Source of the DNA: Octopus sinensis
Lineage: Eukaryota
Direction: 5' to 3'
NCBI RefSeq assembly: GCF_006345805.1
Contig: NC_042997.1
Coordinates: 174,530,001 to 174,594,000, forward strand
Length of the DNA stretch: 64,000 nucleotides
This document shows, in pieces, positions 7,493 through 42,904 of the stretch (position 1 is its first letter; every line of letters starts with the position of its first letter). Under the pieces are notes generated by a model. It was not told the origin of the DNA. It was given only the letters and a program-made list of their open reading frames with translations, and did not search any database. The translations under genes were made by a program, and so were the position numbers.

Positions 7493-8222
7493 AGTGGTTA
7501 ACTGCAACTCTGGGTCTGTGATCACTTTTTCATTCAAATGATAGTAGGTTTACACATATACATACGAGTGTGTATACGCACAAACACAAGAAAAATTATG
7601 GTTAAAGATAACAGAAAAAAACATAAGGAAGTATACAAAGCATAAAAACCACGTACATACACGGATAAGCCCCTATGCACTCATACACACACACACACAC
7701 ACACGCACATATTTATATACGCATACATACACACGCATATACAAAAATTGAACGCCAAGAAAACCAACAGTTGCAGGTTTTCGGAGTTGCAGAGAACTCG
7801 TTGAAAAGGTTATATGCATGTAACGAAAGACTGACAGAACAAAGAATTAAAATTAATGAATAAATCAGCAAAAGCCGCTGTTTTTTTTTTTTTTTTTCTT
7901 GTAGACTGGCTCCCAGAATACAGCAATATAAACATATTGTCTTTCTGAAGCAGACAACATAAAACACCTAAATGTATTAATTTACACACATTGCTATCAT
8001 TCTATGAAAACTGTTTCCTATCACTGATAACACTTGCTGTCTATTATTGCAATAATATTTACTTTCGCAAAGCAGTAGAACAATTATTTTCATTTATTAA
8101 ATCAATTGTACTGAAAACGCATGGCCATCGGAATTTTCTCTAGAATTTCAATATTTATTTTATCAGCAGTTATATTTCGAAAGATAAAATCGACATCATG
8201 AAGAAGATTCTTCTATCATACC

Positions 8223-8638
8223 TATTTCTTTACTACCCACAAGAGGCTACAGACAGAAAGGACAAACAAGGACAGACAAACGGATTAAGTCGATTATATC
8301 GACCCCAGTGCGCAACTGGTATTTATTTAATCGACCCCGAAAAGATGAAAGGCAAAGTCGACCTCGGCGGAATTTGAACTCAGAACGTAGCGGCAGGCGA
8401 AATACCTATTTCTTTACTACCCACAAGGGGCTAAACACAGGGGAGACAAACAAGGACAGACAAACGGATTAAGTCGATTACATCGACCCAGTGCATAACT
8501 GGTACTTAATTTATCGACCCCGAAAGGATGAAAGGCAAAGTCAACCTCGGCGGAATTTGAACTCAGAACGTAGCGACAGGCGAAATACCGCTAAGCATTT
8601 CGCCCGGCGTGCTAACGATTCTGCCAGCTCGCCGCCTT
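8223..8638 (-). mobile_element. tRNA-derived SINE family A, head + two ~184-bp units
   Basis: A box tggcagaatcgtt and B box gagttcaaattcc. Unit repeated. 15-bp TSD agattcttctatcat (8205-19, 8642-56). Confidence 0.92.
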
Positions 8639-9208
8639 GATAGATTCTTCTATCATCCCATCTAACATACCAGAAAATGTTTCTTCCTTCGCCGACGAAG
8701 GATACTGTCCAACGCTTTTGACTCTCCACCTCCTCCTGAGAAAACAATGTAGTCTTCTCTGTGATCTGCTACAGACCCAAAGATTTTGAGTAGAACTGAA
8801 CAGACGGACATAGTAAAAGTCCTCAGTATACTTATTATAAAACAAATTTCTAGCCTTCGTATATACCGTGTCAAGCTTTTTTCTTCTCTTTTTCAGTTGG
8901 ATTTACATGGGTGATGCATGTATCCGTGGAATACTCATTTACTTACGCTACAATTCAATGAGTATTCTATATGTTTAACTAAGGCGATGGAATGACAGAA
9001 TTATTATAGCAAAGGGGTGTATTTGTTCAGGTTCATTACGTTCTGATTTTGGATCACCCCGCGGTCGCCTTCGTCTTTCAACCCTTCGGTATTGGTAAAA
9101 TAAAAATTAAAAAATAACAAATACAGTCAAGTACTGGGTTTGATATAATCTATTGCTTCCCTCCAGATATTTTAATCTTTATGTTTTATGTTATAAACAA
9201 TTATTATT

Positions 9209-9660
9209 TAGGATCGTGAACCTGGTAAGCAGAATCGTTAGCAAGCCGGCCAAAATGCTTAGTGGCATTTCGGCCGTCCTTATGTTTTGAGTTCAAATTT
9301 CGCTGATGTCTATTTTGCCTTTTATCCTTTCAAGGTCGATAAAACAAGAACCACTTGAAAACTGGGGTCGATGTAATCGATTTAGCCAGTCCCCCCCGAA
9401 ATTGCTGGCCTGGTGCCAAAATTTGAAGCCATTATTTAGGTTTGTGAAAGTGGAGAGCTGGTAGAGTCGTTAGCACGCCGAACAGAAATGTTTAATGGTC
9501 ATTTTTTTTTGTGGCTCAACGTTCCGAGTTCAAATTTTGCTGCGGTCGACTTTGCCTTTCATCATTTCGGTTCCATAAAATAAATAGCATTTCAATGCTC
9601 GTGTCAATTTAATCAACTGGCTCGCTCTCCGAACATTTAGCATTTGTACCTATAGTAGAA
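9209..9660 (+). mobile_element. Two adjacent family A SINE monomers with the alternative tail (ccccgaaattgctggcctggtgccaaaatttga)
   Basis: Heads at about 9225 and 9452 and the shared ttcatcctttcggggtcgataaa-like core. Related copies lie near 6000-6130, 10040-10170, 16780-16945, 42665-42870 and 61880-62108. Confidence 0.75.
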
Positions 9661-10174
9661 TGAATTATTTAAGGGGTTATTTGGCAGAATTGTAAGAGAT
9701 TCGGATACTGAGTAAGTTATTCTGTTGATTGAGCAACTAGAAATTCATCATCAGCATTCTTTGAAGGATTCGTATAGATACAATATAGATATATTTCCAT
9801 GCAAACTGTGGACCCGATCTTTGCAAACTACTCATATCACATTATGCTGTGTATACTACGCATCGTGTATTTTACGTTACCAGCTACACACAACATATAT
9901 AGCATTAGAAACACTGCAGTCAACATGCTGTTAGTTATAGCGATTTATTAAAATAAATTTCATTTTCGATTTACATAAAATTTTACACTTATATCATGAG
10001 GATTGTGACCATCAAGGGTACAAGAAGTGAAGTTAAGAGGAGGGGAATAATACTTTATATCAATTTCCAGTAGAGTGTTACTTAATTTTATTGACACTGC
10101 TGATATGAAAGGCAACGTTCGTCTAGGTAGGATTTGAACTCAAAACGTAAATAGTCGGAAGAAATGTCATGAGG

Positions 10175-10469
10175 TTTTTTGTTTGTTCTTTCTCGAGCCA
10201 TGCCTGGCTCATTAGGGCCGGTTTCCGGGTTTCCTTGGCGTATAGGTTCCCCACCGGTCCGTCGCAGGTGAGCTGCAAGATGCAGGAGGAAAGTGTGAGA
10301 GAAAGTTGTGGCGAAAGAGTCAGCAGAATTTCCCGATTACCTTCTGCCGGAGTGGCATGGAGCTTAGGTTTTTCGCTCATAAACACACACATCGCCCGGT
10401 CTGTGATTCGAACCCATGATCCCTCGACCGTGAGTCCGCTGCTCTAACCAATAGGCCATGTGCCTCCAC
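10175..10469 (-). mobile_element. tRNA-derived SINE family D
   Basis: Head tggcctattggttagagcagcgg...gggttcgaatc, GC-rich body and A-rich tail aaagaacaaacaaaaaa. Confidence 0.8.
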
Positions 10470-10597
10470 CAATATTTAATAGCAGCTGAGCAAGAAGAAA
10501 CTCGCAATAGATGCATTATCAGTTTGATAAATTTCTTAGAATATGTCTAAGTGACTCAAATGAGTTTTATTCATATTTATTCATATTTATTCAAATA

Positions 10598-10985
10598 GAA
10601 CTCGGAATCTTGGGGTTAGAAGCCCACGCTCTTAACCACTACGCCATATACCCGTGGATATGCGTAGTGGTTAAGAGCGCGCTACTAAATCCAAGATTCC
10701 GAGTTCGATTCCAAACAGTGATCTGAACAAAAACAACAACAACAACAACAATAATAATAATAATAATAATAATAACAACAACGATAACAACAACAACAAC
10801 ATCGAAAAGTACCTTAGGAATGAGAACCCAGGTTAGAAATTTTCCCAAGACACGTGAAAAAGCTTGGAGGGTATATCAGCCGAAACGTAGTGTTAACAAC
10901 AAACAAGATGAGGACAAATATCCGTCGAATGTAAATAATGTACATAATGTACATAATTCCTCATCTCTTGAATATAGAACTGGAG
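10598..10985 (+). mobile_element. tRNA-headed SINE family E with (AAC/AAT)n linker, preceded by an inverted partial copy of its own head
   Basis: gcgtagtggttaagagcg...gagttcgattcc head at about 10660-10712; mirror copy at 10598-10650. Confidence 0.7.
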
Positions 10986-11214
10986 TAAATAAATACGTTT
11001 TAATGCAAATATGAAAGACGGAAGGGGAAAATGAAGATATGAATGTCTTTCTGTTCTTCTTTTCGTTTTTCTTTTTCTTCTGAAACTCTATCTACTGGTG
11101 GTGGATAAATATAATGATATGTCTAACCGTTTATCTATAGCTGTTTGCTATTAATCATGGACTAACTGCTATTTAGTAGCGGGTCATTTGTAATTTAGTA
11201 GACCTATCTATTAT

Positions 11215-11772
11215 ATTTTACTTGTTTCAGTCATTGGACTGCAGTCATGTTGGGACAATGCTATGAACGGTTTAGTCGTACCAATCAAACCCTCCGTAAT
11301 TATTTTTCTTTTTAAACCTAGTATTTATTCTATCCGTTCTTTTGCCGAACTGCTAAGTTACGGGGACGTAAACAAATCAACACCGGTTGTCAAGCAGCGA
11401 CAGGGGACAAACACATACATACACAAAGATACGCACGTTTAAGTTCTGAGACCCCTTCGGTCACGACACAGACCATGAGATTGCGCCCAGAAAGTCCGGG
11501 CAAGGTTGTTTATGGAAGACCAGCAGTCGCCCATGCATACTCTCCATGCCACGATGTTATCCAAGGGAAAGGCAAAGGGGTCGATACAGCTTGGCACCTG
11601 TGACGTCGCAACTTATTTCTACAGCTGAGTGAACTGGAGCAACGTGAGATAAGTGTCTTGCTCAAGAACACAACACGCAGCCCGGTCCGGGATTCGAGCT
11701 CACAACCTCACGATCGTAATCTCGACGCTCTAACCACTGAGCCATGAGCCTTCACATGTCTAAGTATATACC

Positions 11773-11855
<83 letters not shown>

Positions 11856-12030
11856 CGTGTGCGTGTATGACGGGCTTCTTTCAGTTTCCGTTTATCAAAT
11901 CCACCCACAAGGTTTTAGTTGACCGGGGGTGATAGTAGAAGATACTTACCAAAGGTACCACGCAGTGGGACTGAACCCGAAACTACATGGTTGGGAATCA
12001 AGCTTCTTAACCACACAGCCACCCCTGCGA
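11215..12030 (-). mobile_element. SINE family B split by a family C SINE
   Basis: 3' half at 11215-11436; (CA)n(TA)n linker and head at 11765-12030. Confidence 0.8.
11437..11753 (-). mobile_element. tRNA-derived SINE family C
   Basis: Head tggctcagtggttagagcg...gagctcgaatcccgg, core gttcttgagcaagacactt. Partial relatives at 37200-37497 and about 62270-62400 (both minus). Confidence 0.85.
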
Positions 12031-12102
12031 TATGGTCAATAGCATTCTAGCGATGATAATTCCTTCATTTGGTATACCTGTGATTAACTTTCAACCCAGC
12101 CT

Positions 12103-12142
<40 letters not shown>

Positions 12143-12772
12143 TGTGCACGTTAAAGAAAATAAGATATTGTCTAAAGGAAACATAGCTATTATTTCTCCC
12201 ATGTCGAGAGACCACATAGACGGTTTCCTCGTTGGAGCGTTTTATCTACACTAGATATACTTCCTCAGTTAAGTGTGGAATGTTCATGTCTTGACTGACC
12301 TATGTGCATTAGATGAAACTTGTCGTTTAGTTGCAGTCTACGAGATTATTTGATTTATACAGTAACACCGATCACGACTAGTAAGTAAATAAAGCTGACA
12401 AACAATAATATTCCGATGCTGATTGTCTAATATTAGATTTGACAACATGTGTTACAAGGAGGATGGATAGATTTCTTTCTATGAATAAATTCAATATGGC
12501 CACCGCTTTTCAGTTGATCAAGAGCGAAGTGTTTAACATGTAAAGGGAATTGTGAAACATCAAATATTGTCCCCTATCTTGTTTCGTATCATAAAAATAA
12601 GTGATATTAATTCTATTTCTGCTTGCTATTGGGGAAATGTTTTTGTTTTTTTTAGTCATTTATTTTTGCTTTGTGTGTGTGTATGTGTGTGTGTGTGTGT
12701 TTGTTGCTGTGTGTTGGTGGTGGTTCAGAGTTACTGTTGCGCTTGTAATAGTAGTAGTGACGGTGGCGGGAA

Positions 12773-12805
<33 letters not shown>

Positions 12806-12867
12806 CAGCGGCGTCATCATCATCATCATCAGCAGCAGCAGTAGTAGTAGTAGTAGTAGTAGTTGTT

Positions 12868-12903
<36 letters not shown>

Positions 12904-12904
12904 A

Positions 12905-13175
12905 TTGATGTTTTACCCCCAGGACTTAAATATGTTGCACAAATAAATGACCAAAGGTATTCCGACCATGACCCTCTCGTATGTGTAGAAGGTATCAGAG
13001 ATTACACCATCTAACGTGTCCTTTCTTTTCCCAAATCAGTAGCGTTGGGGAATTCTGATCAGGCAGACATAGGAAAAAGGTGCATTCCAGCCGTGACAAT
13101 CTCATCTTTTCCCACTGTGTTTAGATCCTGTAACCACATTATCCAAATAAGTACTTTTTCAAAGACGGTGCTACA
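12905..13175 (+). repeat. Old interspersed family F (caaagg-attcc-gccgtgacc core)
   Basis: Two degenerate tandem units here. Similar segments at 1-120, 16110-16330 (+) and 6990-7160, 22690-22790, 31690-31890, 33490-33680, 62700-62790 (-). Cross-alignment by eye only. Confidence 0.5.
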
Positions 13176-13254
13176 AAATTTCAAAAAAAAAAAAAAAATT
13201 AGCTACTATTTCTAACTGCAATAACGCCCTCTTAGGGGCTCCCTCATGAGTCCC

Positions 13255-13415
13255 TAGTAGTAGTTGTAGTAGTAGTAGTAGTATTAGTAGTAGTGTGGTG
13301 GTGGTAGTGGTAGTGGTGGTGGCAGTGTTGTTGTTAGTAGTAGTAGTAGTGATAGTGGTGGTAGTGGGGGTGGTGGTAGTGGGGGTGGCAGAGCTGTTGT
13401 TGTTAGTAGTAGTAA

Positions 13416-13455
<40 letters not shown>

Positions 13456-14685
13456 GGTGGTGGTGGTAGTGTTAGTAGTAGTGGCAATGTAGTGATAGTG
13501 ATGATAGAAGTAGCAATAGTAGCAGCAGCAGCAATGGCGATAGTGGCGATAGTGGCGATAGTAATAGTAGTAGTGGTAGTAGTAGTAATAGCAGCAGCAG
13601 TAGTAGTAGCTGCAGTTGATTTTACTGTTGTAGTTGTTTTTATATCTTGACCAGCTAGATTATTAATAGTGATAGATGTACTATCCACTATTGATATCAA
13701 ATGATATCAGTGGTAGATCATAATTAGATTTCGTCCATAATGTATTCTATGGATACTTGTCCCGAACGTAGATGCTGAGTATGATAAATGATAAATCCTA
13801 CACCTTCACCTCACCTCACTGCCACCGCCGATTATTGCGATCATAAATGTCACCATCTGTAAATATAAAGATGTCTCCGAAGACAAACGGTCAACATAGT
13901 TTTGGCCTTTTTCTATATTCATTCCCTTCTTCATCTTCTCCTCCAACTTCTTCTTTTTCTTCTTTTTCTTCTTCTTCTTCTTCTTCTTCTTCTCTTCTTC
14001 TTCTTTCTTCTTCTTCTTCTTCTTTATTTTTCTTCTTCCTCTTCTTCTTTATCTTCTTCTTCTTTTGCTTCTCCTGTCTCTTCTCCTTTTTTTCTTCTCT
14101 CTTTCTTCCTCTCTCTCCCTCTCTTTTTCATCTTCTTTTTCTTCTCCATCTTCTTCTTCACCTTCTTCTCTTCTTCTTTTTCTTCTTCTTTTGCTTCTCC
14201 TGTCTCTTCTCCTTTTTTTCTTCTCTCTTTCTTCTTTTTCTTCTTCTTCTCTCTTCTTCTTCTCCCTCCTCTCTTCTTTTTCTTCTTTTTCTTCTCCATC
14301 TTCTTCTTCACCTTCTTCTCTTCTTCTTTTTCTTCTTCCTCCTCCTCTTCTTCTTCTCCCTCCTCTCTTCTTTTTCTTCTTTTTCATCTTCTTTTCCCTT
14401 CTCTTTTCCTTCATCATCTTTTTTTCTTTTTCTTTTCCTTCTTCTTCTTCTTCTTCTTCTTCTTCTTCTTCTTCTATGCGTCCTTTACTTTTTCATTTCC
14501 TTTTCTTTCGTAATTTTTCTTTTCTTCTAAGCCTTCATCTTTACTTTGTCACTTCTTTTTTTTATTCATGTTGTCCTCCTCCTCCTCTTCTTCTTCTTTT
14601 TCTTCTTCTTCTTCTTCTTCTTCTTCTTCTTTCTTCTTCTTCTTCTTCTTCTATTTCTTTTTCTTCCTCTTCTTCTTCGTCCCCA
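13255..14685. repeat. (TAG/TGG)n tract (13255-13620) and ~760-bp (TTC)n polypyrimidine tract (13925-14685)
   Basis: Directly visible. Confidence 0.95.
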
Positions 14686-15560
14686 TCTTTTTTATTCTCC
14701 CTAATATTTATCGCGTATATGCCCATAAACATGTGTAGCAGTAGTAGTAGTAGCAACAGCAACAGCAGCAGCCGCAACAGCAGTGGTTGTGGTGGTGGTG
14801 GTATTGATGATGGTGGTGCCGATGGCATTGGTAAAATGGTGAACTTGTCAAATATATCGCCTTTTACAAGAGCATCGCTGTTGTAAACAGTTTGAAGTAG
14901 TTTAACATAAAAACAATATATAGTTTCTACAACAAGTAGAGCAACGAACAGCTTGTCCTGGCGGGGTTATATTATTACATCACAACAAACAATGAATGGT
15001 GACAGTTCAATTTCATAATTACATGCCGCTATTGGCTTTCTTCGACATAATCTATTTGGAATAGGTAATGTCGTAAAAATGCTTTCAACGCATCCAATTT
15101 ATGATGCTATTTCTTGGCATAAGCGGCATAAATTCTTGGCAAAACTATTCTCGTCGATGTGGAGCTCTATGACAAAACGAAGTAGTTTCAATATTCGATC
15201 GTAACATTGCAATTTATGTAACGACGGAACTTTTAAGAGTAAATATAAAATTTAAAACAACGACTTTCATTCATATTGCCCTGTTGTATTTCATTGCTGC
15301 GCAGTTAAGGTATTTCTTTTTGCATCACACACACACACACACACGTGTGTGTGTGTATGTTTGTATGTGTATATATATATGTATGTGTATATGTATATAT
15401 ATGTATATATATTTACATATGTATATATGTATGTATATATATATATGTATATATATATATAATATATATATAGATACGTATTTATATTTACATATGTATA
15501 TATGTATATATATATATATATATATATAGATATGTATTTATATTTACATATGTATATATG

Positions 15561-15597
<37 letters not shown>

Positions 15598-16987
15598 ATG
15601 TGTGTGTATGCAAACACACACTCATACACAAACATATACATATGCACACACACGTATAAAATTCGAAAGGTGTGTAAAGTATCACAAGAGACAAGCTGGA
15701 CACACACACATACATACACGTGTGTGCGTGTATGTGCGTATGTGTGTGTGTGCGCGTGTGTGTGTGCGCGTGTGTGTTTGTCCATTTTATTTCTGTTTAT
15801 GTTTCTGATACTTTACACGTCTTACTCACTTTGATAAATTGGTAACAGAGTATTTTATGGCAGAGAAATTAAGATGGAACGGAGCTTCGTTGGTCACCTG
15901 ATACAAGCTTCGTAAGATAGCTATGGATACCGAGAAAAATGTTATGTCAACAATTTCGCTATTTTTCTTAGTTAAAATATTCGTAAGAAGGTAGCGCTTA
16001 GCCTCTGACAACGTTGGAATCGAAATCTGCCGAATATATGCTTGATAGTTTTTGGAGTCCTTCTACTGGGTCATGATTTCAAAAGATCTGAGACATCACA
16101 TCACCTACATTTGTTAATTGTTGTTCTTTAGTCCCAGGTTGACCCTAACTGAGTATACCGTTGATCATAAGCGTTTTATCCGTGATCGTCAAACCTTTCT
16201 TTATAAATCTATGGATAAGTTTCTCTTGTTCGTATTTCCGTTCCTGATTAAAGATAATATGTGTAATTTGAGGTTATTTAGCTGCTGTTTCCAGCAGGTC
16301 TAACGAATTACCTAGCATCGGCCTCTACACTCTTATAAGTAGCTATAATAATCATTACTAAATTTCAAAAACCAATTCACTTCTTTCCAATGAAAATTCT
16401 TTTGTATCTATTCAAAAATGGCCTAAACTATTTTATAATAATCAAATATTACTAATGAGGAACATAAAACATAGGGAGGTTAGATCATCAGTTAAAATCC
16501 CTCGCAACATTTGTTCTGACACTTAACGTTTTCAGTTCAAATCCAACCTTCCTTATCCATGGTTCATACAATAAACTGTCAAATCAAGTACTTGAGCCCG
16601 TATAATCCACTTCTCCACTCCTCTAATTTTAGATGTGGATATTGTCATTCTGATTGCATATCGCTTTGATATATAAAGCTTGGGATATTTGTGACTTACC
16701 TAAATCGAATGTTTACAGATTTTGTACAGAATGGTTTCAAATTGTAGCACAATACCAGTAAATTCGGAGGAGACGCTAAGTTGATCACATCGACCCCAAT
16801 GCTTATCTGGTATTTATTTTAACGACCCCGAAAGAATGGAAAGTAAAGTCAGCCTAGGAGCAATTTGAACTCAGGACGTGAAGACGGACAAAATGCCGCT
16901 AGCACTTTTCCCGGTGTGCTAACAGCTCTGCCAGTTTTCCGCCAGATTTTGTACATAATAATATTGCGCATTTAACGAATTTAAAGA

Positions 16988-18037
16988 TAACAGGAGCACT
17001 CAGAGAGTGCAAAACACCGCCAAGGCAACCAACTTCCTCACAACGAGTAGCCGGAGATGGTTTTTAAAATGAGAATACCTGAAATAAACTTGACTGCTCT
17101 CACAAACGAGAATACGTAAAATGAACCCGACCGCTCTCAAAAATTAAGTAAAAATACCAGAAAAATAATCTAGAATCCTTGTCCGGTACATGATTGATCC
17201 CAGCGGTAGTCATGGAATGTGAAGGTGAGTGTACGGGTCATGTTTGTAATGCTGTGTGCGTGTCATCTGCAGTGGGAACAGGGACAGTTTTCTCTATGAA
17301 GGCTTTTTTAGTCTATCCACTGATATAGTTCTTTTACAACCATTAAGGTCCACAGGGAAAATTTATCCGTGCGCGTAAGAAAACGGAAAGGACCTGCATA
17401 CGGTGCTGTTAACGGAGGTTTAACAACATCGTTGCGCACAAAAACATGAGTCCAAAAAGTGAATCTTCCTTCAAGGCAGAGCTAGAAATGCAATTGTGAA
17501 GTAGGTAAGAGGTTTTAAACCAGAGTGATATATTCAAAATTGGTAAAACTAAAAATTGTCAAGGATGAATTTATTATTGTTACTGAATATTTTAGTTATT
17601 TAATTTCTGAACGGTTGCGCTGCTGTTTGTTTATGTAGTTTGATTTCTTTATCCATCGGTTTCTACTAAGATAGAGACGCGAGTAAAATTAATTATAGAG
17701 AAACGAATATAAAACTTTGGAAACAGCAACGCAACAATAGTTTACGTGGAAACCATGAGCATGCTTTCATGGGAGATAATCAGGGATAGACTTGAAAGAA
17801 CATGAGATTGTGATACTTCGTATGAAATAATGTAAATATAACAAATATTCCAGAATCTTTGTCCGGTACCGGATTGATCCCCAAATCTAATCAGTTCGTG
17901 CCAATTACGAAGCCAAACATCCCTGAAAGTTTCATCCGAATCCATCCAGCGGTTCTTGAGATATCTTGTCCACGGACAAACAAACAAACAAACACGACTG
18001 AAAACAATACCTCCGCCTTCGCTAAGGCGGAGGTAAT
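16988..18037 (+). mobile_element. Helentron/Helitron2-type non-autonomous element(s), interrupted or composite
   Basis: 5' hairpin gcact-cagag-agtgc plus sub-terminal aacaccgccaagg. (caaa)n before a 3' 12-bp stem tacctccgcctt-cgct-aaggcggaggta (18008-35). Confidence 0.7.
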
Positions 18038-18291
18038 GACACCATGCACGCTAAAAATTGGTAATACCTTAGCTTCTTAGCAGTTTTTACATAGTTAAAT
18101 TATCAGAAATGGCCGTGACGTTTGTAAAATTTGTTAACATGATGTTGTATAGTATAATATTTATATTGATTAAGAAGAAAGAATTGTCAAAAGAATGTCA
18201 TAAACATATTTCTAAACATAGGCTTGCTAAATCAAAGCCAACTCGTAGCTAAAAACATAAAGAACATACTCAAGCAATATATATGATGTGA

Positions 18292-18368
<77 letters not shown>

Positions 18369-18419
18369 GCGTGTGTATGTTCTGGGTGATTGGTTACTTA
18401 GGTATGTATGCATGTGTGT

Positions 18420-18516
18420 ATCTCATTATTCAGTTTTATTTCAAGGTTTCTTGCCAATAGAAAAAGAGCCGGTTTCTAATCTAGATTCAAGGCTCCTTCA
18501 TTGGAATTTCAACATT
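18420..18516 (+). repeat. ~95-bp element abutting (TATG)n; second copy at 25493-25585 (-)
   Basis: tcagttttatttcaag...cttgccaatag...aaggctccttcattggaat occurs in both orientations, each next to a TATG array. Possibly a LINE 3' end. Confidence 0.7.
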
Positions 18517-18914
18517 TGTATGTATGTATGTATGTATGTATGTATGTATGTATGTATGTATGTACGTACGTACGTACGTACGTACCTATGTATGTATGTA
18601 TGTATGTATGTATGTATGTATGTATGTATGTATGTATGTATGTATGCATGTATGTATGTACGTATGTATGTATTTGTATATGTATATATATATATATATG
18701 GACAATATCACACGTGGATGGAGGATAACAGGTTTTATCATTAGATCACATTTGTTTCTACACTGAACTCCAGCTTTAAGTTACTCTTACTCTTTTACTC
18801 TTTGACTGTGTCCATGCTGGAGCATATATATATGTATACATGTATGTTTGCAAATATGTATATCTGTACATGCATCTGTATGTATGCATGTATGTGTGTG
18901 TGGATGAAAGCGAG

Positions 18915-19335
18915 TGGCAGCTGCAAAGCAAATGTCAGTATTGTGGATCAGGAACATACAGTTAACTATCCCGTGGAATTCATTTATATCCTCAACTCTA
19001 TCAATGCAAATACTTCAACTGAAAAGCTTCGTCCAGTAATACTGCTGTGTCATTTATGTGTACCTAAAACTGACTTACAGTAAAGCATTTTATACTACAC
19101 AACATCGCTATTACTATTGTCTCTGTGTGAAGCAAAAAGAGATGATGCTATGATATCCAAAATTCTATCCATGCCAACAGAGCTGCGTTTTTGGTTTCGA
19201 GGTCTTCAGATTCCAGATCATCCAAGTCTTGCTATTTCAATCAGCAAATCCCAAAGGCAAATAGTACTACATCCCGGGGAATACTACTTTGCTAATGGTG
19301 AATTGCTTGTAGATTGCTTAAGTGTTGGAGACATT
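18915..19335 (+). pseudogene. Helitron Pif1-like helicase C-terminal remnant
   Basis: Frameshifted VDQEHTVNYPVEF..LNS, PVILLCHLCVPK, MPTELRFWFRGLQIP, LAISISKSQRQ and YFANGELLVDCLSVG match the Pif1 motifs YPxEFLNS, PIILLRNL, FxRxQFP, AFAxTINKSQGQ and FSHGQLYVAxSRV. Confidence 0.85.
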
Positions 19336-19953
19336 CCCTTAATCTCGTTCTTTACATTATTGATGATAAAATCATAGGTATTGAGTATCCCGAGGTGATA
19401 ACATGGCAATCTTACGAATTGCCTAAACTATAATGGATGTTAATCTAAATTTATGTAAACAAGGGTTCGTCGCAATCTTATTATCATATCTGCAAGTATT
19501 GCAGTTCCAATATTTGTATTAGTGTTTCCTCTGGGCACTCTGGTTTCTGCACGTTATAGGAATAATTATATTATTCTAAGAGTGATTTACCTCCCGATAA
19601 TCCAGTTTCTATTCACTGCTCAAAATATTGTAAGAATTAAAATAGTTTAAGAATATGATAAAATATATTAAGTTCGAATGAAATATAACTGTTATTACGA
19701 TGAAAGTAAAGAAAGTTTGCTTTAGAAGCATTAAGATGTCTAGAAAGTTAAGGAAGTAATTTTTTATTCTCAAACGCAGGATAATGCTAATAATATAGCA
19801 TGAACAGGATAAACTTACCCATATTTTGCAGAAAAATGTGTCGGCAGCAGAGTTCTGTAATATGATGGAATTGCATATGTCATATATGCAATTAAACTGC
19901 TAATTATGCGAAAAACTATTCTGCTCATATATATATATATATATATATCTATA

Positions 19954-20009
<56 letters not shown>

Positions 20010-20054
20010 CTGTTTTGTGAAGAGATAAAATGAGTGTATAAGCGTGCTGTGATA

Positions 20055-20470
20055 CATTTCTTTACTACCCACAAGGGGCCAAACATAAAAGGGACAAACA
20101 AGAACAGACAAAGGGATTAAGTCGATTACATCGACCCCAGTGCGAAACTGGTACTATATTTATCTACCCCGAAAGGATGCAAGGCAAAGTCGACCTGGGC
20201 GGGATTTGAACTCAGAACGTAACGACAGACGAAATACTTATTTCTTTACTACCCACAAGGGGCTAAACACAGAGGGAACAAACGAGGACAGACAAACAGA
20301 TTAAGTCGATTAGATCGACCCCAGTGCGTAACTGGTATTTAATTGATCGACCCCGAAAGGATGAAAGGCAAAGTCGACCCCGGCGGAATTTGAACTCAGA
20401 ACGTAACGGCAGACGAAATACGGCTACGCATTTCGCCCGGCGTGCTAACGTTTCTGCCAGCTCGCCGCCT
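20055..20470 (-). mobile_element. SINE family A, head + two units
   Basis: Same architecture. 18-bp TSD tataagcg(tg/at)ctgtgata (20037-54, 20471-88). Confidence 0.92.
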
Positions 20471-21329
20471 TATAAGCGATCTGTGATAGGTACTGTAAGA
20501 GTTTTTGTAGAATATCAATAAACAGATCTGTTCGATAATTAGAATAATGTAGAAGGAGCCAATTAAAAGCTAAACTTTGTAACGATAGTTATAGCGCAGG
20601 GCGTAGTTTTGTGTAAGAATTTTGACCTGAAACATGTGGTGCCTATTTTGAAGATGCTAGAAATTCAATAGCGAGGAATAATTGCTTGATGCACTGGCCG
20701 AGCAAATAAAAACGCAACAGTTTCACGATTAGTTCAAGCATCTTAAACCTCTAGGAACGGGTGTATATCACGAGCGAGTGAAGGTCATATAGTTTGAGGA
20801 GTAAGTGATAACAAAATCTAAGGTATGAAAGATGTATGAGTTCTTTAAAAATATAACAGGAGCCTCCATTAGAAGTTCTCGTAAAACTGTTATCACATAA
20901 ATAAATAGTAATATTAGAACGACAAGGGAAAAACAAATTGCCCGATTTTTGTGAAAGAACATGAAAAAGGAGGGATTTGGAGGTACAAACTGATTAACTG
21001 AGACTCGATTTAAATTATAAATATCTTCAAAATGTGCTGATTTGGCAAGAATATCTGTTTATTTTTCTTCGGCAAATATTCAAGAATCAGCTAATTACAC
21101 TGCAAGTATTTATGTGTATCTAGCAGCATTTCTTCTTCCCTACAGCTATAATGTATGGCTTTCTATAAACAACTAAACACACACTGACGCACACATACAC
21201 ACAAACACACAGGCATACACTCACACAAGCACTGACGCACACACACACACACACTCACACATATAACCGTCTAAGAATCCATAAGTCAAAAACATATGCA
21301 CTCGTATATTTGTCAATAGAGTGGGTATA

Positions 21330-21600
21330 TTAATCGAAGTTTACCCGTTTGATATACTCATTACAGCCGATCTTCCCATCGGTATTTCGCTTGGGATTTA
21401 ACGGAGACATTGGGTGCACAGCTAAAGGAAAAACTCATGGTATTTTTCTACTAAGCTAAGGAAAATCTTACCTACGCTTAAAAAGAAGGGTGGTGTAAAC
21501 CACGACTCTTTCTGGTGGCGTTTTCTCTTGGAATGGTAAGGGTCTGGCATATTACTAATATTACAAAGCCTCATTATAGCAGGGGCCGGCGCCGCCCCGA
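21330..21600 (-). mobile_element. Penelope-like element ORF remnant
   Basis: KRKRHQKESWFTPPFFLSVGKIFLSLVEKY followed by SCAPNV resembles the PLE linker RKRxIxWFNPPF...GKxFLxLIDKHF...SYSCMPN. Confidence 0.65.
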
Positions 21601-21808
21601 CACTCTGGCCGCCAGCGGTTTTAAGGAAAGGATTAGTCATACGCTACACCCTAATCTCTAAATGCTACTATTGGGTTGACACAGAAACTTAAAATTCTGC
21701 ATGTAAGTCTCCATACTTGTATCAGTCAATAAATATAATCATCTATTTATAACGATAATGAGGCCTAGTTCTTGTGTCGTTACACGTGATATGTTTATAT
21801 ACATGCGC

Positions 21809-21870
<62 letters not shown>

Positions 21871-22359
21871 AACCATTGTACATATATGTGTTACAGCGAC
21901 GAGTGTTCCAGATGATCCGATCAACGAACAAGCCTGTTCATGAAATTAACGAGGTTCTTAGGGGACACAGAATTTGACAAAATTGGTCCTTTGAAATACA
22001 TGTACAACTAATTTTTGTTAAGTGGACATACTGTCAATATGTATGCATGTCATCTACATATAATTTACCTACCTTACTCCTTTCCATCTATATCTCTCTC
22101 CTCTTTTTTCCCCTTTCTCTGTACTGATACACACATACATGTGTGTGTGTGTATGTATGCATGTATGTATGTGCATATATGTGTGTGTGCATATATGTGT
22201 ATGTGCATATGTGTGTGGGGGGAGGAGAGAGAGGGGGAGAAAGACCCACAAAGTGTTGTAGGAAGACAGATGTATACATCTGTATATACAAACCAATATA
22301 TGTAGTATAGCATAGAAATATTTCTTTTTACCACTATTTGTCTTTTCTCGTTATATATA

Positions 22360-22447
<88 letters not shown>

Positions 22448-24093
22448 TGTGTGTGTGTGTGTGTGTGTGTGCGGTGCGCGTATGTGTCTTTGTATGAATG
22501 CTTGTGTTTCTCTGTGTGAATAAATGTAGCTTAAGCGAAAAAAGAATTCCGTGCAATTCTAATAGCTCATTTAATAGCTGGATATTTTATGCATCAGTTA
22601 CATTACAACTATTAGTTTCCCCGTTTCCGGTTCCTCAGGTAATAAAAAGGCAATGTAACATTAAATAATATAGTCCCACAAATCCCTAAAAACACGGAAT
22701 GGTAACGGTTGAAATGCTTTTGGTCATAATTTTTCTCAATAAAAGCTAACCTGACGTTAAACATCAACACCACCAGTAACATATATTATATAGAATTATC
22801 TAGTATTTTGATATGCATCTTCTTACAGGCTACTGCCGAACGAAAGTAATACGAGAGAGAAAAGTTTAGTATAAACACATTTCCTAATTGCTATGAAACC
22901 CTAGAGTTGCTCCGGAGGAGAGGGATAGGTTTCCAAAAGTCGGATTTAATGTGTTTGCTCTGAGATCTCTTCAAAACAGCGCACGGAAACGTTCTACTTC
23001 CAAACTAGGGGATTTTAACCATCAGGTTTAGTTTTGTGTCATTTATGGAAATAATCGGTCTGAAAATCACTTCTCAGGTTGTTATTTTGGTTGATGTTTT
23101 TGTTGGTGTTTTGATTCATATTAACTTTGATTAACTTTGATCTGCGGTCAACTTATAATATACGATATCTGAAAAACAATGATGGAATCATTGTTTTTCA
23201 GATATCGTATATTATATACCACATTAGCCAATATATTTATCTGAAGAACATTTGGCTTTTTATTTCTTACCGATCGAATGGCCGCACAGAGATTCCTTCG
23301 ATGCGTAACACCTACCTAGGTACGTATACCTATATATACATAGAGGCGTGACTGTATGGCAAGAAGCTTGCTTACCAGCCACATGGTTTCGGGTTCAGTC
23401 CCACTGTGAGGGACCTTGGGCAAGTGTCTTTTACTATAGCCTCGGGCCGACCAAAAGGCTCATATGTCTATAGCAATCATCCTGAATTACCATAGTGCCT
23501 TCGACATGTAACAACTCAATCACCAGATATCTAACCATGTCTACCTGATAAGTAACACCTATTCTGAAATGTATTAAAGCCTTGTTTTATATTTACCCAA
23601 TTCCGATACTCGTACAGATATCGGTGGATACTTATTTAGAAAAATTCTTGCGACGAACAAAGATTTATTTAGCTGTTTCCAAGGACTACTTGGTATGACA
23701 CTTGACATTGTTGGTTGAATAGTCTAAGCAGCTGTACAGTGATCGTCATCGAAGAGAATATTAAATAGAATTTTACATAGCATTGTTGATATTAAAAGCA
23801 ATAGTGATAAACAAAATGTACTCCGAAATTGCTCATTTGAAAAATAACCTGAATGCCAGTAACAGTTCAAAGAGGCTAGAAAAATAACACCGGATGCATT
23901 ACACAGGTAGTCTTGCTGTGTGCCATTGTTTGAAAGAAACCGTGTTAAAATTTATCTTACTCTACGAACAAAAGGCATCTTTCTCTTATGAAAAATTAGT
24001 CTTGTAGGTCGTTTTTAAGTAGGGCTAGTTAAAGTGGGTAATTATTTAAAAGAACAAAGGTCTTTGTGTGTGTGTGTGTTTATATATATATAT

Positions 24094-24139
<46 letters not shown>

Positions 24140-24161
24140 TAATATATATGTATGTATTACG

Positions 24162-24197
<36 letters not shown>

Positions 24198-24216
24198 CGT
24201 ATACCTATATATACAG

Positions 24217-24373
24217 AGAGACGTGACTGTATGGTAAGAAGCTTGCTTACCAGCCACATGGTGGTTTCGGGTTCAGTCCCACTGTGTGAGACCTTGGGCA
24301 AGTGTCTTCTACTATAGCCTCGGGCCGACCAAAACCTTATGAGTGGATTATGTAGTCGTATATACACACACAC

Positions 24374-24406
<33 letters not shown>

Positions 24407-24648
24407 TGTATGTATGTATGTATGTATGTATGTATGTATGTATATATGTATGTACATTTGTGTGTCTGTGCTTGTCCCTGTACCATCGCTTGACAACCGA
24501 TGCCGGTGTGTTTACACTCCCGTAACTTAGCGGTTCGGCCAAAAAAATAGAATAATTATTACACTTACAAAGAATAAGTCCTAGGATCGATTCGTTCGAC
24601 TAAAGGTGGCGCTCCAGCATGGCCGCAGTCAAAAAGTAAAAGTATAAA
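24217..24648 (+). mobile_element. SINE family B with (TATG)n linker
   Basis: Head, ccttgggcaagtgtcttctactatagcc core, 3' half and tail all present. Confidence 0.85.
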
Positions 24649-24649
24649 A

Positions 24650-24693
<44 letters not shown>

Positions 24694-25650
24694 GAAGAAG
24701 GAAGAATTGTTAAATAAGGGGTACTATATCCTCCTATTTTTGCGGGCGATTAACCTCTGGAAACGGCCGTTGGTAACCTATTTTAGCAATTTTTAACTAT
24801 CCTGACTTTTAATTTCTTTCCTCCTATCTTTTATTTCGCTTTCATCACAACTTCAGACCTTCTTCAATATATTTACGTATACATGTATATTTTAATGTAT
24901 TTATGTCTGCATCTAAATTTCTTTTAATCTATTAGCTTACATATATATTTTTAATACATTTATTTATTCATAGATTTTTTTAAAGCCTATGGATTTATCG
25001 ATTTTTAATGTATCAAAAATACTTGTTCTTTCAATTCATCTGAAATCGGAGTCATGTTTATGGATTAAATTACCTGGTCTTACGGTTCTTCACCTATATT
25101 TTTATCTTTTGTCTCAAGTTCCTCTTGAGCACTTCTAAGTGCAAACCTCAATTTTGTGAGAGATTTTATATATATGTATATATATATATACGCTCTGTAT
25201 ATTATATATACTATGAATATCATTGATAGAAGATATATTCTTAATCAAGCTCACTGGAACTGTGAAAATCATCTAAAACTCCCTAAAAGTTTATCATTTG
25301 AATATATATGAGCATGTCTAGATAGGCAACTATATGCATGAGAATATAAAGCATAAAGCAAAACATACAAATCTGCACACATACATACATATATGCATAC
25401 ATACATACATACATACATACATACATACATACATACATACATACATACATACATACATACATACATACATACAAGCAAAAATCCCCTATTGTTGATGTTC
25501 AGATTCCAATGAAGGAGCCTTGAATCTAGGCTAGAAACCAGTTCTTTCTCTATTGGCAAGATATCTTGAAATAAAACTGAACAATGACATACATAGATAT
25601 GGGATGCATATAAAAGACAGTTCTGCTGTAGAATACATACTTACGAGCAC

Positions 25651-25755
25651 AAGGAATATTGGTGGAACTTGCTCATCGAAATTTATAAAGAGTGCACACA
25701 TAATAGACTTGACACAATTATTTGGGATGAAAAGTCATGTACAATAATAGACGTA
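25651..25755 (+). mobile_element. RLE-type LINE endonuclease fragment
   Basis: KEYWWNLLIEIYKECTHNRLDTIIWDEKSCTIIDV resembles HNRPDI..WD...C.IID. Cut off by the SINE at about 25762. Confidence 0.65.
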
Positions 25756-25761
25756 AGGCTC

Positions 25762-25947
25762 AAGCATGGCTGTGTGATAAGAAGCTTGCTTCCCAACCAC
25801 ATGATTAAAGGTTCAGTCCCACAGTGTGGCAGCTTGGACAAGTGTCTTTAACCCTATCCTTGGGTCAAACCAAAGTCTCGAGAGTGGATTTGGTAGAAGG
25901 AAACATACAAAAGCTCGTCGTATATACACACACACACGCACACACAC

Positions 25948-26010
<63 letters not shown>

Positions 26011-26210
26011 TTTGTGTCTGTGTTTGTCTCCCCACCATCACTTGCCGAGTGATGTCGGTGAGTTTACGTCCCCGTAACTTAGCGGTTCAGCAAAAGAGAC
26101 TGAAAGAATAAGTACAAAGAATAGTTCCTGAGGTCAATTTTTCGACTAAAATCCCTTGAAGGCGGTGCTCCAGCATGGCCGCAGTAAAATAAGTGAAACA
26201 AGTAAAAGAG
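25762..26210 (+). mobile_element. SINE family B
   Basis: Same modules; (CA)(TA)(TG) linker. Confidence 0.85.
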
Positions 26211-26521
26211 ATAGAGTTAGTTGCTCTGCAGTTAGGGACAACTCTTCCAAAATCTTTGTGAAAGAAAATAACTATGAACTTCTTTGAAACCTGCAACTGC
26301 TTCGAAACCTGCAACTCCTCTACTCTGATAATAAATTTACATTCTTATCAATCGGTGCACTCATTTATGATAATAAATACCTAAGCTACAATGGGAAACA
26401 TTAGGAATTTCAAGGCAAGAAAGTAATTGGCTAACGCAATGTAATCTATAAGTGAAATAGTAAAAATATGCAAGACTTTCTTAAAGTTCGAAATTTTATA
26501 ATTATGATTTTTATTATCCAA

Positions 26522-26905
26522 CTAGCAGTATCGCCCGGCGTTGCTCAGGTTTGTAAGGGAAATAACTATAAAGCATTTTTAGAGAGTTATAGCCAAAAAA
26601 TAGCAAAAAAAATGGAAAAAAAATGATGGTAAATTTTTTTGAGAGTTAAAGAAGGTGGAGTTGCGTCTCCTAGACGGTCTGTGGTTTGGGTTTCTGATTC
26701 TCGACCCCATGTCGAATTTATCGATTTTTTTTAGAACTGGGGGAACTTTTCAAAATTTTCGCTGCGTTAGTTTTGAATTATGACATTGGGCTATGTGTGT
26801 GTCAAGTTTCATCAGAATCGGTTGAAAGCCGTGGTCAGGGTGAGGGTACGAGAAAACAGACACACAGAAAACGCACAGACAAACTGCCGTTTATATAGAG
26901 AGAGA
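26522..26905 (-). mobile_element. Non-autonomous Helitron
   Basis: On the minus strand A|TCTCTCTCTATATAAA ... cctgagcaacgccgggcgatactgCTAG|T. The last ~65 bp are nearly identical to 61633-61698. Confidence 0.88.
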
Positions 26906-27120
26906 TTTCTAATAATGGATCTTTCATTTATTTTTTCTTTGAAAACAAAAACCATCATTCCTGAAAGAATATTTTATCGTATATTTTTTACTTGTTCATA
27001 GCATAGAATTGTGGCTATGCGGGGGCAACACCTTGAAGAGTTTATTGGAATAAATCAACTGATTTTCAAGTCGAACTAAGTCGAACAAATCAATATACTT
27101 TTTAATGTAGTACTTATTCT

Positions 27121-27457
27121 TATTTCTTTATTGCCCACAATGGGCTAATTTATCGACCCCGAAAGGATGAAAGGCAAAGTCGACCTCGATAGAATTTGAA
27201 CTCGGAATGCAGCGGCGGACGAAATACCTATTTCTATTTCTTTATTACCCACAAGGGGCTAAACATAGAGGGGACAAACAAGGACAGACAAGTCGCTTAC
27301 ATCGACCCCAGTGCGTAACTGGTACTTAATTTATCGACCCCGAAAGGATGAAAGGCAAAGTCAACAACGATGGAATTTGAACTCGGAATGCAGCGTCGGA
27401 CGAAATACCACAAAGCATTTCGCCCGGCATGCTAACGTTCCTGTCAGCTCGCCGCCT
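27121..27457 (-). mobile_element. SINE family A, head + two units (distal unit internally deleted), nested in a degenerate family B copy
   Basis: Same junction. 12-bp TSD tgtagtacttat (27106-17, 27459-70). Confidence 0.9.
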
Positions 27458-42645: not shown

Positions 42646-42904
42646 TTGCTATTAACTTTTTCAATATTGAGGCAGCGAGCAGACTGAGTCATTACCGCGC
42701 TGGGCAAAATGTTTAGCGACATTTCGTTCGTCTTTCCATCCTGAGTTCAAATTCTTCCGTGATCTACTATACCTTTAGCCTTTCCGGGTCGATGAATTAA
42801 GTACCAATTAAGCACTACCCACTTTTCCCCCAAAATTTCAGGTTTGCTGCCTATACTAAAAAGGAATTATTGTTTTTATACCGTTGTTATCACCTTATTT
42901 TTAC

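What the first reader, a model, noticed from the sequence alone, without database searches (positions are those of the whole stretch)
8223..27457. Recurrent head+unit+unit SINE insertions with array-private variants: possible re-copying of one RNA during reverse transcription
Seen: three independent insertions (8223-8638, 20055-20470, 27121-27457), each with its own TSD (15, 18 and 12 bp). Each is one tRNA head plus two ~184-bp units joined at the same point. Both units within an array share variants that differ between arrays: ctcagaacgtagc/caggcg at 8 kb, ctcagaacgtaac/cagacg at 20 kb, ctcggaatgcagc/cggacg and tttatt at 27 kb. The junction is an inverted repeat GAAATA-NN-TATTTC, so the RNA 3' end (GAAAUA) is complementary to the internal start of the unit (UAUUUC). 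Inference: 3'-end pairing closes the RNA into a pseudo-circle. The LINE RT, on reaching the internal site, jumps back to the 3' end, giving rolling-circle-like multimers.
Basis: partly seen in the sequence, partly recalled or inferred. Interest (0 to 1): 0.8.

Follow-up and report, generated by a model that had tools for sequence, protein, structure and literature searches.

The report
Octopus SINE with variable tandem bodies
Three insertions of an octopus short retroposon each carry one tRNA-like head and two copies of its body joined at one fixed point; such arrays arise repeatedly and usually mix bodies from different source copies, so they are not one RNA copied twice.

Summary
All three loci are minus-strand copies of one octopus SINE family. 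Each has a ~50-nt head and two ~184-nt bodies, and each array lies inside a single pair of target-site duplications (15, 18 and 12 bp). I added about 295 kb of Octopus vulgaris DNA, giving 21 elements of the family: 10 monomers, 8 two-body arrays, and 3 arrays in which family bodies sit upstream of a body from an older sister family. All 12 joints link the complete tail (GAAATA + GG, AG or TG) to TATTTCG/TATTTTG, apart from one mutated start. That site is the 3' arm of an anticodon-like hairpin.

Bodies cluster neither by locus (2 of 9 arrays) nor by position. Shared private variants lie only in the first 45 nt of a body. About half the arrays pair two different subfamilies. Unit numbers do not fit a rolling, geometric process (10:10:1, no homotrimer). 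The proposed tail pairing competes with a much stronger 12-bp hairpin.

Best reading (about 0.45): the reverse transcriptase repeatedly switches template at the top of the hairpin onto the tail of a second family RNA, with added homologous switching. The main rival is self-targeted nested insertion. This is a new variant of known multimeric SINEs, of moderate interest.

The parts
8588..8638 (-). 8-kb array: head. It has an A-box-like TGGCAGAATCG and the 5' arm plus loop of the anticodon-like hairpin.
8405..8587 (-). 8-kb array: head-proximal body (u1). It starts TATTTCG and ends GTAAAGAAATA-GG. Subfamily type 1 (ATG at positions 76/79/108).
8223..8404 (-). 8-kb array: 3' body (u2). Subfamily type 2 (TAA at positions 76/79/108), so this array is a heterodimer.
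8205..8219 (.). Target-site duplication of the 8-kb array. The other copy is at 8642-8656 (15/15).
8642..8656 (.). Target-site duplication of the 8-kb array, second copy.
20421..20470 (-). 20-kb array: head.
20237..20420 (-). 20-kb array: head-proximal body (u1). The joint dinucleotide here is AG.
20055..20236 (-). 20-kb array: 3' body (u2).
20037..20054 (.). Target-site duplication of the 20-kb array. The other copy is at 20471-20488 (16/18).
20471..20488 (.). Target-site duplication of the 20-kb array, second copy.
27408..27458 (-). 27-kb array: head.
27227..27407 (-). 27-kb array: head-proximal body (u1). It has a 9-nt deletion and its tail hexamer is doubled (GAAATAGAAATAGG).
27121..27226 (-). 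27-kb array: 3' body (u2), with an internal deletion of about 75 nt. It shares six to seven rare variants with u1 in its first 38 nt.
27106..27117 (.). Target-site duplication of the 27-kb array. The other copy is at 27459-27470 (12/12).
27459..27470 (.). Target-site duplication of the 27-kb array, second copy.

Best explanation
The three loci are retroposed copies of an octopus tRNA-like SINE, called family A here. Its monomer is a ~50-nt head plus a ~184-nt body that ends ...CCCCTTGTGGGTAGTAAAGAAATA. Each locus was integrated as head + body + body inside one pair of target-site duplications.

Across the genome sample, the family occurs about equally as monomers and as two-body arrays. The arrays are most likely assembled repeatedly during reverse transcription, in these steps:
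1. The partner LINE's reverse transcriptase starts on the tail of one SINE RNA, of family A or of the older sister family B.
2. It copies that body up to the top of the 3' arm of the anticodon-like hairpin in the head (GG|UAUUUCG).
3. There it leaves that template and continues on the 3' tail of a second family-A RNA, which it copies through body and head.
4. The second RNA sometimes comes from the same source gene, giving arrays whose bodies share private variants, such as the 27-kb one. More often it comes from another source, giving heterodimers such as the 8-kb one.
5. Homologous template switches within the first 45-100 nt of the body add mosaicism.

Shown: the anatomy, single target-site duplications, a fixed joint, variable unit number, heteromeric arrays and the mosaic pattern of shared variants.

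Inferred: that the joining happens at the RNA/cDNA level, the order of the steps, and the reason the enzyme leaves at that point (a hairpin, a cleaved loop or a modified loop base).
For: - One target-site duplication pair encloses each whole array and there is none at the joint.
- The joint is the complete 3' tail abutted to one internal nucleotide in 12 of 12 joints from 11 loci, one of them (L056) with a mutated body start (CACTTTG). An RNA 3' end used as a template gives this signature. DNA breakpoints do not.
- Three arrays place family-A bodies upstream of a family-B body at the same joint. In two of them B-specific markers already appear by body position 12. The joint therefore formed independently at least twice and linked different RNAs.
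- Subfamily markers assort about randomly between the two bodies of an array.
- Monomers are as common as arrays (10 against 11 in about 359 kb).
- Only the family-A tail is ever found at a joint. There are no B-B, C-C or B-A arrays.
- Frequency argues for an enzyme property. About 36% of family-A bodies (12 of 33) have their tail at an internal joint. Ordinary targets are loose (ATGATAG, TATCACAG, ACTAGGG, AACAGCTG, (TA)n). By my estimate, SINE-borne GGTAT sites are only a few percent of such sites in the genome.
- CpG retention is the same in head-proximal and 3' bodies (82% and 84%). This fits a single insertion date, although the test has low power.
Against: - No RNA or cDNA evidence is available.
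- The joint GG|TATTT looks like the family's own preferred genomic target. Three of 12 clear target-site duplications start GGTAT or GGATG (P=0.0045), and others start TATTT.
- Head-proximal bodies form a tighter set than 3' bodies: mean distance 0.095 against 0.124, with 3 of 256 label swaps as extreme. They also carry fewer private changes: 22 in 1595 nt against 36 in 1507 nt, P=0.048.
- Both of these points fit a later insertion into an older resident copy.
- Unit numbers of 10:10:1 have too many exact dimers for a constant jump probability.
- Confinement of shared rare variants to positions 1-45 needs an extra assumption of homologous switching.
- No head-less monomer starting exactly at the joint was seen among 10 monomers.
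- The sample is only 21 elements.
Confidence: 0.45

Rival explanations
1. Self-targeted nested insertion. The internal GG|TATTTCG mimics the partner endonuclease's preferred target. A new family-A copy is primed at that nick inside a resident SINE. Its cDNA is joined upstream through homology with the resident's own body start, so no second head and no visible target-site duplication remain. The head-proximal body would then be younger than the head and the 3' body.
For: - Three of 12 clear target-site duplications begin GGTAT or GGATG (P=0.0045). Several others begin TATTT or lie in (TA)n.
- The joint dinucleotide is GG in 10 of 12 joints, although heads carry GG or CG about equally.
- Head-proximal bodies are more homogeneous (3 of 256 permutations) and have fewer private changes (P=0.048).
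- Shared variants lie only next to the body start, as a homology or duplication tract would.
- Family B, which is older (pairwise distance about 0.17 against 0.10), occurs only downstream.
- The CAA-tail subfamily is never upstream (0 of 12 against 6 of 18, P=0.057).
Against: - About a third of all family insertions would have to land on one site per resident copy, while other targets are loose. By my estimate this is a roughly 30-fold excess over the share of SINE-borne GGTAT sites.
- Shared tracts reach position 30-38 in three arrays, whereas ordinary target-site duplications are 9-18 nt.
- The head dinucleotide differs from the joint dinucleotide in 5 of 11 arrays.
- No clean full-length nested product (head + short duplication + head + body + body) was seen; one unresolved head-fragment cluster at L053:7209-7400 begins like one but lacks the rest. 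No inverted tail-to-tail pairs were seen either.
- CpG retention is equal in the two bodies.
Confidence: 0.25
2. A few dimeric master genes. The duplication arose once or a few times and arrays are copied as dimers from dimeric Pol III transcripts. Diversity then comes from homologous template switching with other SINE RNAs. Monomers come from monomer masters, or from dimers by in-register deletion or internal initiation.
For: - The joint is nearly constant (GAAATAGG|TATTTCG), while ordinary tail-to-target junctions vary: GAAAT|, GAAATA|, GAAATAAGA|, GAAACA|.
- There is an excess of exact dimers over the geometric expectation.
- Distances among first bodies correlate with distances among second bodies across arrays (Mantel r=0.72, P=0.007).
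- L053:1889 and L057:16604 share the same deleted subtype in the first body.
Against: - No fixed difference separates first from second bodies.
- No two arrays share both body types. L053:1889 and L057:16604 differ in their second body's tail type.
- Private variants shared by both bodies occur in at least four different lineages. That needs repeated duplication or conversion.
- The A-B arrays need a new join within 11 nt of the same point.
- The Mantel signal may only reflect a shared array age.
Confidence: 0.15
3. The 3' GAAAUA pairs with the internal UAUUUC and closes one RNA into a pseudo-circle. The reverse transcriptase then re-copies the same molecule, like a rolling circle.
For: - The complementarity is real, and only the family-A tail, which has GAAAUA, occurs at joints.
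- Two arrays have bodies that are each other's closest relatives: window 27 kb and L051:9021.
- Private variants are shared in several arrays.
Against: - At least four of nine arrays are heterodimers for linked markers, and three arrays join two families.
- There is no excess similarity in positions 46-182.
- Unit numbers are not geometric and there is no homotrimer.
- UAUUUCG is held in a 12-bp hairpin of -18 kcal/mol, and the tail is not paired to it in the predicted fold.
Confidence: 0.1
4. DNA-level duplication after insertion, by replication slippage or unequal crossing-over within or between inserted monomers. This has been proposed for tandem SINE arrays in bivalves and squamates.
For: - The 8-kb array's 3' flank begins GGTAT, which repeats the body start and could support slippage.
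- Comparable TSD1-(SINE)n-TSD1 arrays are reported in Scapharca broughtonii (PMC11481361).
Against: - Heterodimers and A-B arrays cannot arise by duplication in place.
- Seven of eight A-A arrays lack the flank microhomology.
- The duplicated segment ends exactly at the retroposon's own 3' end in every case.
- Flanking target-site duplications are intact, which excludes ectopic exchange.
Confidence: 0.03

Closest known systems
Octopus tRNA-derived SINEs OR1/OR2/OK (Ohshima & Okada 1994), cited as CORE-SINEs in PMC4758252 and PMC4824008
   Same: Same host group. Both have a tRNA-like head with A- and B-box-like motifs, a central conserved stretch, a non-poly(A) tail and variable target-site duplications.
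   Different: The papers I could read do not mention variable numbers of head-less bodies.
Tandem-like SINE arrays of the TSD1-(SINE)n-TSD1 type in the clam Scapharca broughtonii (PMC11481361)
   Same: Both have one target-site duplication pair around an array. The first unit has a full head and later units are truncated at one point inside the tRNA-like head. Both hosts are molluscs.
   Different: In the clam, internal units also lack the 3' tail, the arrays examined have more than three units, and unequal recombination was proposed. Here the tail is complete at every joint, arrays are almost always two units, the units are often from different subfamilies or families, and arrays make up about half of the family.
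Multimeric and dimeric SINEs: jerboa Dip/B1 multimers and Alu-type dimers (summarised in PMC10702118); colugo mono-, di- and trimeric tRNA SINEs (cited in PMC4758252)
   Same: One family exists with different unit numbers, and heteromers with other families occur.
   Different: Those multimers are made of full-length units, each with its own head, or are fixed dimers with position-specific differences. Here only the head-less part is repeated, and no position-specific difference exists.
Template switching and end-to-end template jumping by non-LTR reverse transcriptases: L1-made chimeric retrocopies, R2 enzyme in vitro, and SINE birth by switching (10.1101/081950). The first two are from my own knowledge.
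   Same: Two RNAs are joined in the same orientation within one integration event, and the acceptor is entered at its 3' end.
   Different: Known chimeras have variable joints and are rare. Here the donor exit point is fixed to a nucleotide and about a third of bodies are involved.
Tandem TE dimers formed by double insertion at a preferred target inside the element itself (described for Drosophila elements; from my own knowledge)
   Same: A self-borne target motif could make head-to-tail arrays. This parallels the nested-insertion rival.
   Different: Those dimers keep both complete elements and their duplicated target. Here there is no second head and no internal duplication.
Retrozymes: circular-RNA retroelements with hammerhead ribozymes (PMC11722881; 10.64898/2026.07.22.740005)
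   Same: Tandem units of a few hundred nt, with a proposed rolling-circle RNA intermediate.
   Different: No hammerhead or any other Rfam family was found in the window or in the element. Each array has a head and target-site duplications.

Membership tests
tRNA-derived SINE (LINE-mobilised retroposon) | Dispersed multi-copy element flanked by target-site duplications of variable length | tested here: met
   21 elements were found in about 359 kb, in the window and on several O. vulgaris chromosomes. Their duplications are 9-18 bp.
tRNA-derived SINE (LINE-mobilised retroposon) | 5' head derived from a tRNA, with internal Pol III A and B boxes | tested here: inconclusive
   A-box-like TGGCAGAAACG and B-box-like GAGTTCAAATTCC are visible by eye, and the first 97 nt fold with an acceptor-like stem (z=-2.5). 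However, ARAGORN and the Rfam tRNA model find nothing, even at E<=10.
tRNA-derived SINE (LINE-mobilised retroposon) | 3' tail shared with a partner LINE | tested here: inconclusive
   No LINE 3' end carrying the tail was present in the 359 kb searched.
CORE-SINE superfamily | Conserved CORE domain downstream of the tRNA-like part | tested here: inconclusive
A whole-element alignment is not significant.
Fixed dimeric SINE copied as a dimer (Alu type) | Consensus dimer with position-specific diagnostic differences; monomers rare or ancestral | tested here: not met
   No column separates first from second bodies. Monomers are as common as arrays.
   This holds in 2 of 9 arrays only. In the others, 3-26 bodies from other loci are closer.
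   Counts of 10:10:1 compare with an expected 13.4:4.9:2.8 (P=0.006). The only three-unit array is A-A-B.
Retrozyme / ribozyme-bearing circular RNA element | Hammerhead (or other self-cleaving) ribozyme in each unit | tested here: not met
   There is no Rfam match at gathering score in the window, nor at E<=10 in 8380-8660.
SINE-derived tandem array made by unequal recombination (bivalve or squamate type) | Highly similar units of one family, expandable to long arrays | tested here: not met
   Units are no more alike than those from unrelated loci in positions 46-182. Heterodimers and inter-family arrays occur, and no array exceeds three units.
Chimeric retrocopy made by reverse-transcriptase template switching | Two different RNA-derived segments in the same orientation, acceptor joined at its 3' end, one target-site duplication pair | tested here: met
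   A-B and A1-A2 arrays have a complete tail at the joint and flanking duplications where these can be scored. That the join happens at the RNA level is inferred.

The most novel reading that the evidence does not exclude
An octopus LINE reverse transcriptase leaves its SINE template at one exact nucleotide of a tRNA-like anticodon hairpin in roughly one event in three, and resumes on the tail of another SINE RNA. The cause could be a loop cleaved like a tRNA half, or a loop base modified like tRNA position 37 that blocks the enzyme. If so, host tRNA processing or modification would shape retroposon architecture. It would also provide a natural, countable record of in vivo template jumping.
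Probability: 0.25. Interest if true: 0.65.

Novelty: new variant of a known kind. Interest (0 to 1): 0.45.

Why it matters
SINEs make up about 12% of the Octopus vulgaris genome (PMC13282606), and most of them are unclassified. This family shows that a large share of copies are composites built at one fixed point.

That has three consequences:
- Repeat libraries and age estimates will misjudge these arrays if they treat each one as a single consensus.
- The copies give a countable in vivo record of template switching, or of self-targeting, by an invertebrate LINE machinery.
- They show a plausible first step from dispersed SINEs towards the tandem SINE arrays reported in other molluscs.

Tried and rejected
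- I translated the SINE antisense ORF to fish for copies in the protein collection. There was one hit, an Octopus bimaculoides UniRef entry, and it has no genomic record.
- A metagenome scan with the tail pattern gave 49 loci (L001-L049). All are chance matches of 20-25 nt.
- I searched with the channel-like exons of P0016 to reach orthologous loci in other octopods. This gave three weak hits. The one long contig (L059) holds no copy of the family.
- ARAGORN and Rfam found no tRNA, no ribozyme and no other family.
- I looked for a LINE 3' end carrying the tail in 359 kb and found none.
- A CpG-decay comparison of first and second bodies showed no difference, with low power.
- CpG decay of family-B bodies against their family-A partners was counted by hand and is not significant.
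- Head-allele linkage, used to ask whether the head belongs with the first or the second body, had too few monomers to decide.
- The apparent 'ATTAAGAA' head variant in L051 is better read as a shared target sequence of two adjacent insertions.
- I searched for inverted tail-to-tail pairs, which a pure endonuclease-motif model predicts, and found none.

Full report
**What is in the window**

The three regions are copies of one element on the minus strand. Read 5'->3', each has three parts:
- A head of about 50 nt: AAGGCGGCGAGCTGGCAGAAnCGTTAGCACGCCGGGCGAAATGCnTAGCnG.
- A first body of about 184 nt that starts TATTTCG and ends ...CCCCTTGTGGGTAGTAAAGAAATA, followed by two bases.
- A second body of the same kind.

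The whole array, not each body, is flanked by direct repeats of 15/15, 16/18 and 12/12 bp. Tandem Repeats Finder confirms two copies of period 183-184 at 8 kb and 20 kb. The 27-kb copy has deletions in both bodies.

**What kind of element it is**

- The window is octopus DNA. A reading frame across the element matches only an Octopus bimaculoides entry. A decayed Tc1-like transposase at 47.4-48.6 kb is 93-94% identical to Octopus vulgaris proteins.
- The head carries A-box-like and B-box-like motifs. Neither ARAGORN nor Rfam recognises a tRNA, and no ribozyme is present.
- Similarity to the CORE domain is weak.
- Related families with the same head and central part but other 3' ends are also in the window.

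**Widening the sample**

The public DNA scans held no octopus sequence. I therefore fetched O. vulgaris chromosome segments through Tc1-like genes. With the window this gives about 359 kb.

Family A occurs there as 10 monomers, 8 two-body arrays, two arrays of an A body followed by a body of the older sister family B, and one A-A-B array. Unit number therefore varies within the family, and monomers are as common as arrays.

**The joint**

- In all 12 joints the complete family-A tail meets the body start (TATTTCG, or TATTTTG after CpG decay; one copy is mutated to CACTTTG). The tail is GAAATA followed by GG in ten cases, AG in one and TG in one.
- No other family's tail is ever found at such a joint.
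- In the predicted RNA fold, the body start is the 3' arm of a 12-bp hairpin with GGGCGAAAUGC of the head (-18 kcal/mol in a 38-nt context). The tail can offer only five A/U-rich pairs, and it is not paired to that site in the fold of the monomer.
The proposed pseudo-circle, however, competes with a much stronger local structure.

I aligned 30 family-A bodies.
- By locus: the array partner is the closest relative in only two of nine arrays (window 27 kb and L051:9021). For the 8-kb and 20-kb arrays, 11-24 bodies from other loci are closer.
- By position: no column distinguishes first from second bodies.
- Three linked markers define two subfamilies (ATG x11, TAA x9). Arrays are discordant for them in four cases, concordant in three and mixed in two, which is about what random pairing gives. 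The 8-kb array is such a heterodimer.
- Rare variants shared by both bodies of an array are real, but they lie only in the first 45 nt of the body: 10 observed against 1.0 expected, P<0.0001. In positions 46-182, 1 was observed against 1.7 expected.
- The variants listed for the 20-kb array are simply the family consensus.

**Unit numbers**

The counts of 10 one-unit, 10 two-unit and 1 three-unit elements reject a geometric series (chi-square 7.4, P=0.006). There are too many exact dimers and no homotrimer. Three exact dimers out of three in the window would itself have at most 1.6% probability under such a model.

**What is excluded**

- Duplication in place at the DNA level is excluded as a general route. 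It cannot make heterodimers or A-B arrays. Seven of eight A-A arrays lack the flank microhomology it would need. The repeated segment also always ends at the retroposon's own 3' end.
- A single ancestral dimer cannot be the whole story. No position-specific differences exist. Private variants shared by both bodies occur in at least four lineages. In two A-B arrays, B-specific markers appear by body position 12, so the join was made again within 11 nt of the same point.
- Re-copying of one RNA fits at most the minority of arrays whose bodies are alike.

**What remains**

Two mechanisms explain a precise, recurrent join of a family-A tail to that site.

(a) Template switching. A DNA 3' end ...CGAAATA(CC), which is the nascent cDNA at the top of the hairpin, is extended on the tail of a second SINE RNA. 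This fits:
- the single target-site duplication per array;
- the complete tail at every joint;
- joining of different RNAs;
- the high frequency (12 of 33 bodies have their tail at an internal joint) despite otherwise loose targets;
- the equal CpG retention of the two bodies.

(b) Nested insertion. The same DNA 3' end is a nick in a resident copy, made because GG|TATTT mimics the preferred target. The new cDNA is then joined upstream by homology. This fits:
- the excess of target-site duplications starting GGTAT (3 of 12, P=0.0045);
- the GG bias at joints;
- the tighter and less mutated set of first bodies;
- the confinement of shared variants to the body start.

Against (b):
- It needs an extreme preference for one site per resident copy.
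- It needs homology tracts longer than ordinary duplications.
- Its expected by-products were not clearly seen; the one candidate, a head-fragment cluster at L053:7209-7400, is incomplete.

I rank (a) first at about 0.45 and (b) second at about 0.25. Dimeric masters with recombination come third.

**Relation to what is known**

Multimeric and dimeric SINEs are known, as are SINE-derived tandem arrays. These include arrays in a clam that have one target-site duplication pair and head-truncated internal units (PMC11481361, PMC10702118). Template switching by non-LTR reverse transcriptases is also established.

The following features are not described in the papers I could reach:
- repetition of the head-less part only;
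- a donor exit point fixed to a nucleotide of an anticodon-like hairpin;
- a complete tail at every joint;
- free mixing of subfamilies and of two families;
- a share of about half of the family.

I therefore class this as a new variant of a known kind.

**Limits**

- The sample is only 21 elements, from loci chosen through Tc1-like genes.
- No orthologous loci, RNA data or partner LINE were available.
- Several contrasts rest on P values of 0.01-0.06.

Noticed in passing
window 47400-48600 (+): Decayed Tc1/mariner-type transposase gene with frameshifts and stops. It is 93-94% identical at the protein level to several annotated Octopus vulgaris 'Tcb1 transposase' genes. I used it to reach O. 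vulgaris chromosome segments.
   Followed up: partly
window 9229-9436 (+), 9452-~9650 (+), 16777-16943 (-), 42670-42816 (+), 61941-62107 (-), 6001-6133 (+): Copies of sister SINE families. They share the head and central part (75-80% identity) but end ...GGTGCCAAAATTTGAAnCCATT. All are monomers. The copy at 9229 has a target-site duplication TATTTAGGnTnGTGAA and sits directly in front of the head of the next copy.
   Followed up: partly
window 27121-27226; L051:16743-16872; L052:20386-20536: Three independent arrays carry a body with a large internal deletion of roughly the same central region (about positions 58-100, 85-160 or 98-150). In two of the three it is the 3' body. This may be another trace of template switching within a body.
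   Followed up: no
window 27229-27240: The tail hexamer is doubled at the joint of the 27-kb array (GAAATAGAAATAGG). Two ordinary insertions end GAAATAAGA. The tail may therefore be a short tandem repeat, as in many LINE/SINE pairs.
   Followed up: no
L051:12139-12990 (-): A family-B monomer sits directly upstream of the A-A-B array. Both are bounded by ATTAAGAA-like sequence, which suggests two insertions into the same target.
   Followed up: partly
L053:7209-7400 (-): Two SINE fragments lie head to tail, each with a head but lacking most of the body: head + 17 nt, then AAA, then head + about 31-45 nt. They are interrupted by the antisense monomer L053:6984-7208, which also has 9 extra SINE-like bases at its 5' junction. 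I did not resolve this.
   Followed up: partly
L051:14500-14560 (-): The 5'-truncated head of the A-B array carries a 12-nt tandem duplication of the hairpin's 5' arm and loop (ACAAATGCATAG GCGAAATGCATAG), just before the joint site.
   Followed up: no
window 13926-14678, 15370-15581, 18517-18697, 19930-20010 and many others: The window is very rich in microsatellites: (CTT)n of about 750 bp, (TA)n, (TGTA)n, (GT)n. Several family-A insertions in the O. vulgaris loci lie inside (TA)n tracts.
   Followed up: no
L059 (ENA ERZ21867824 contig, 20.7 kb): This contig was reached through a weak channel-domain match. It holds a reverse-transcriptase ORF but no copy of this SINE superfamily, so it is probably from another organism.
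   Followed up: no
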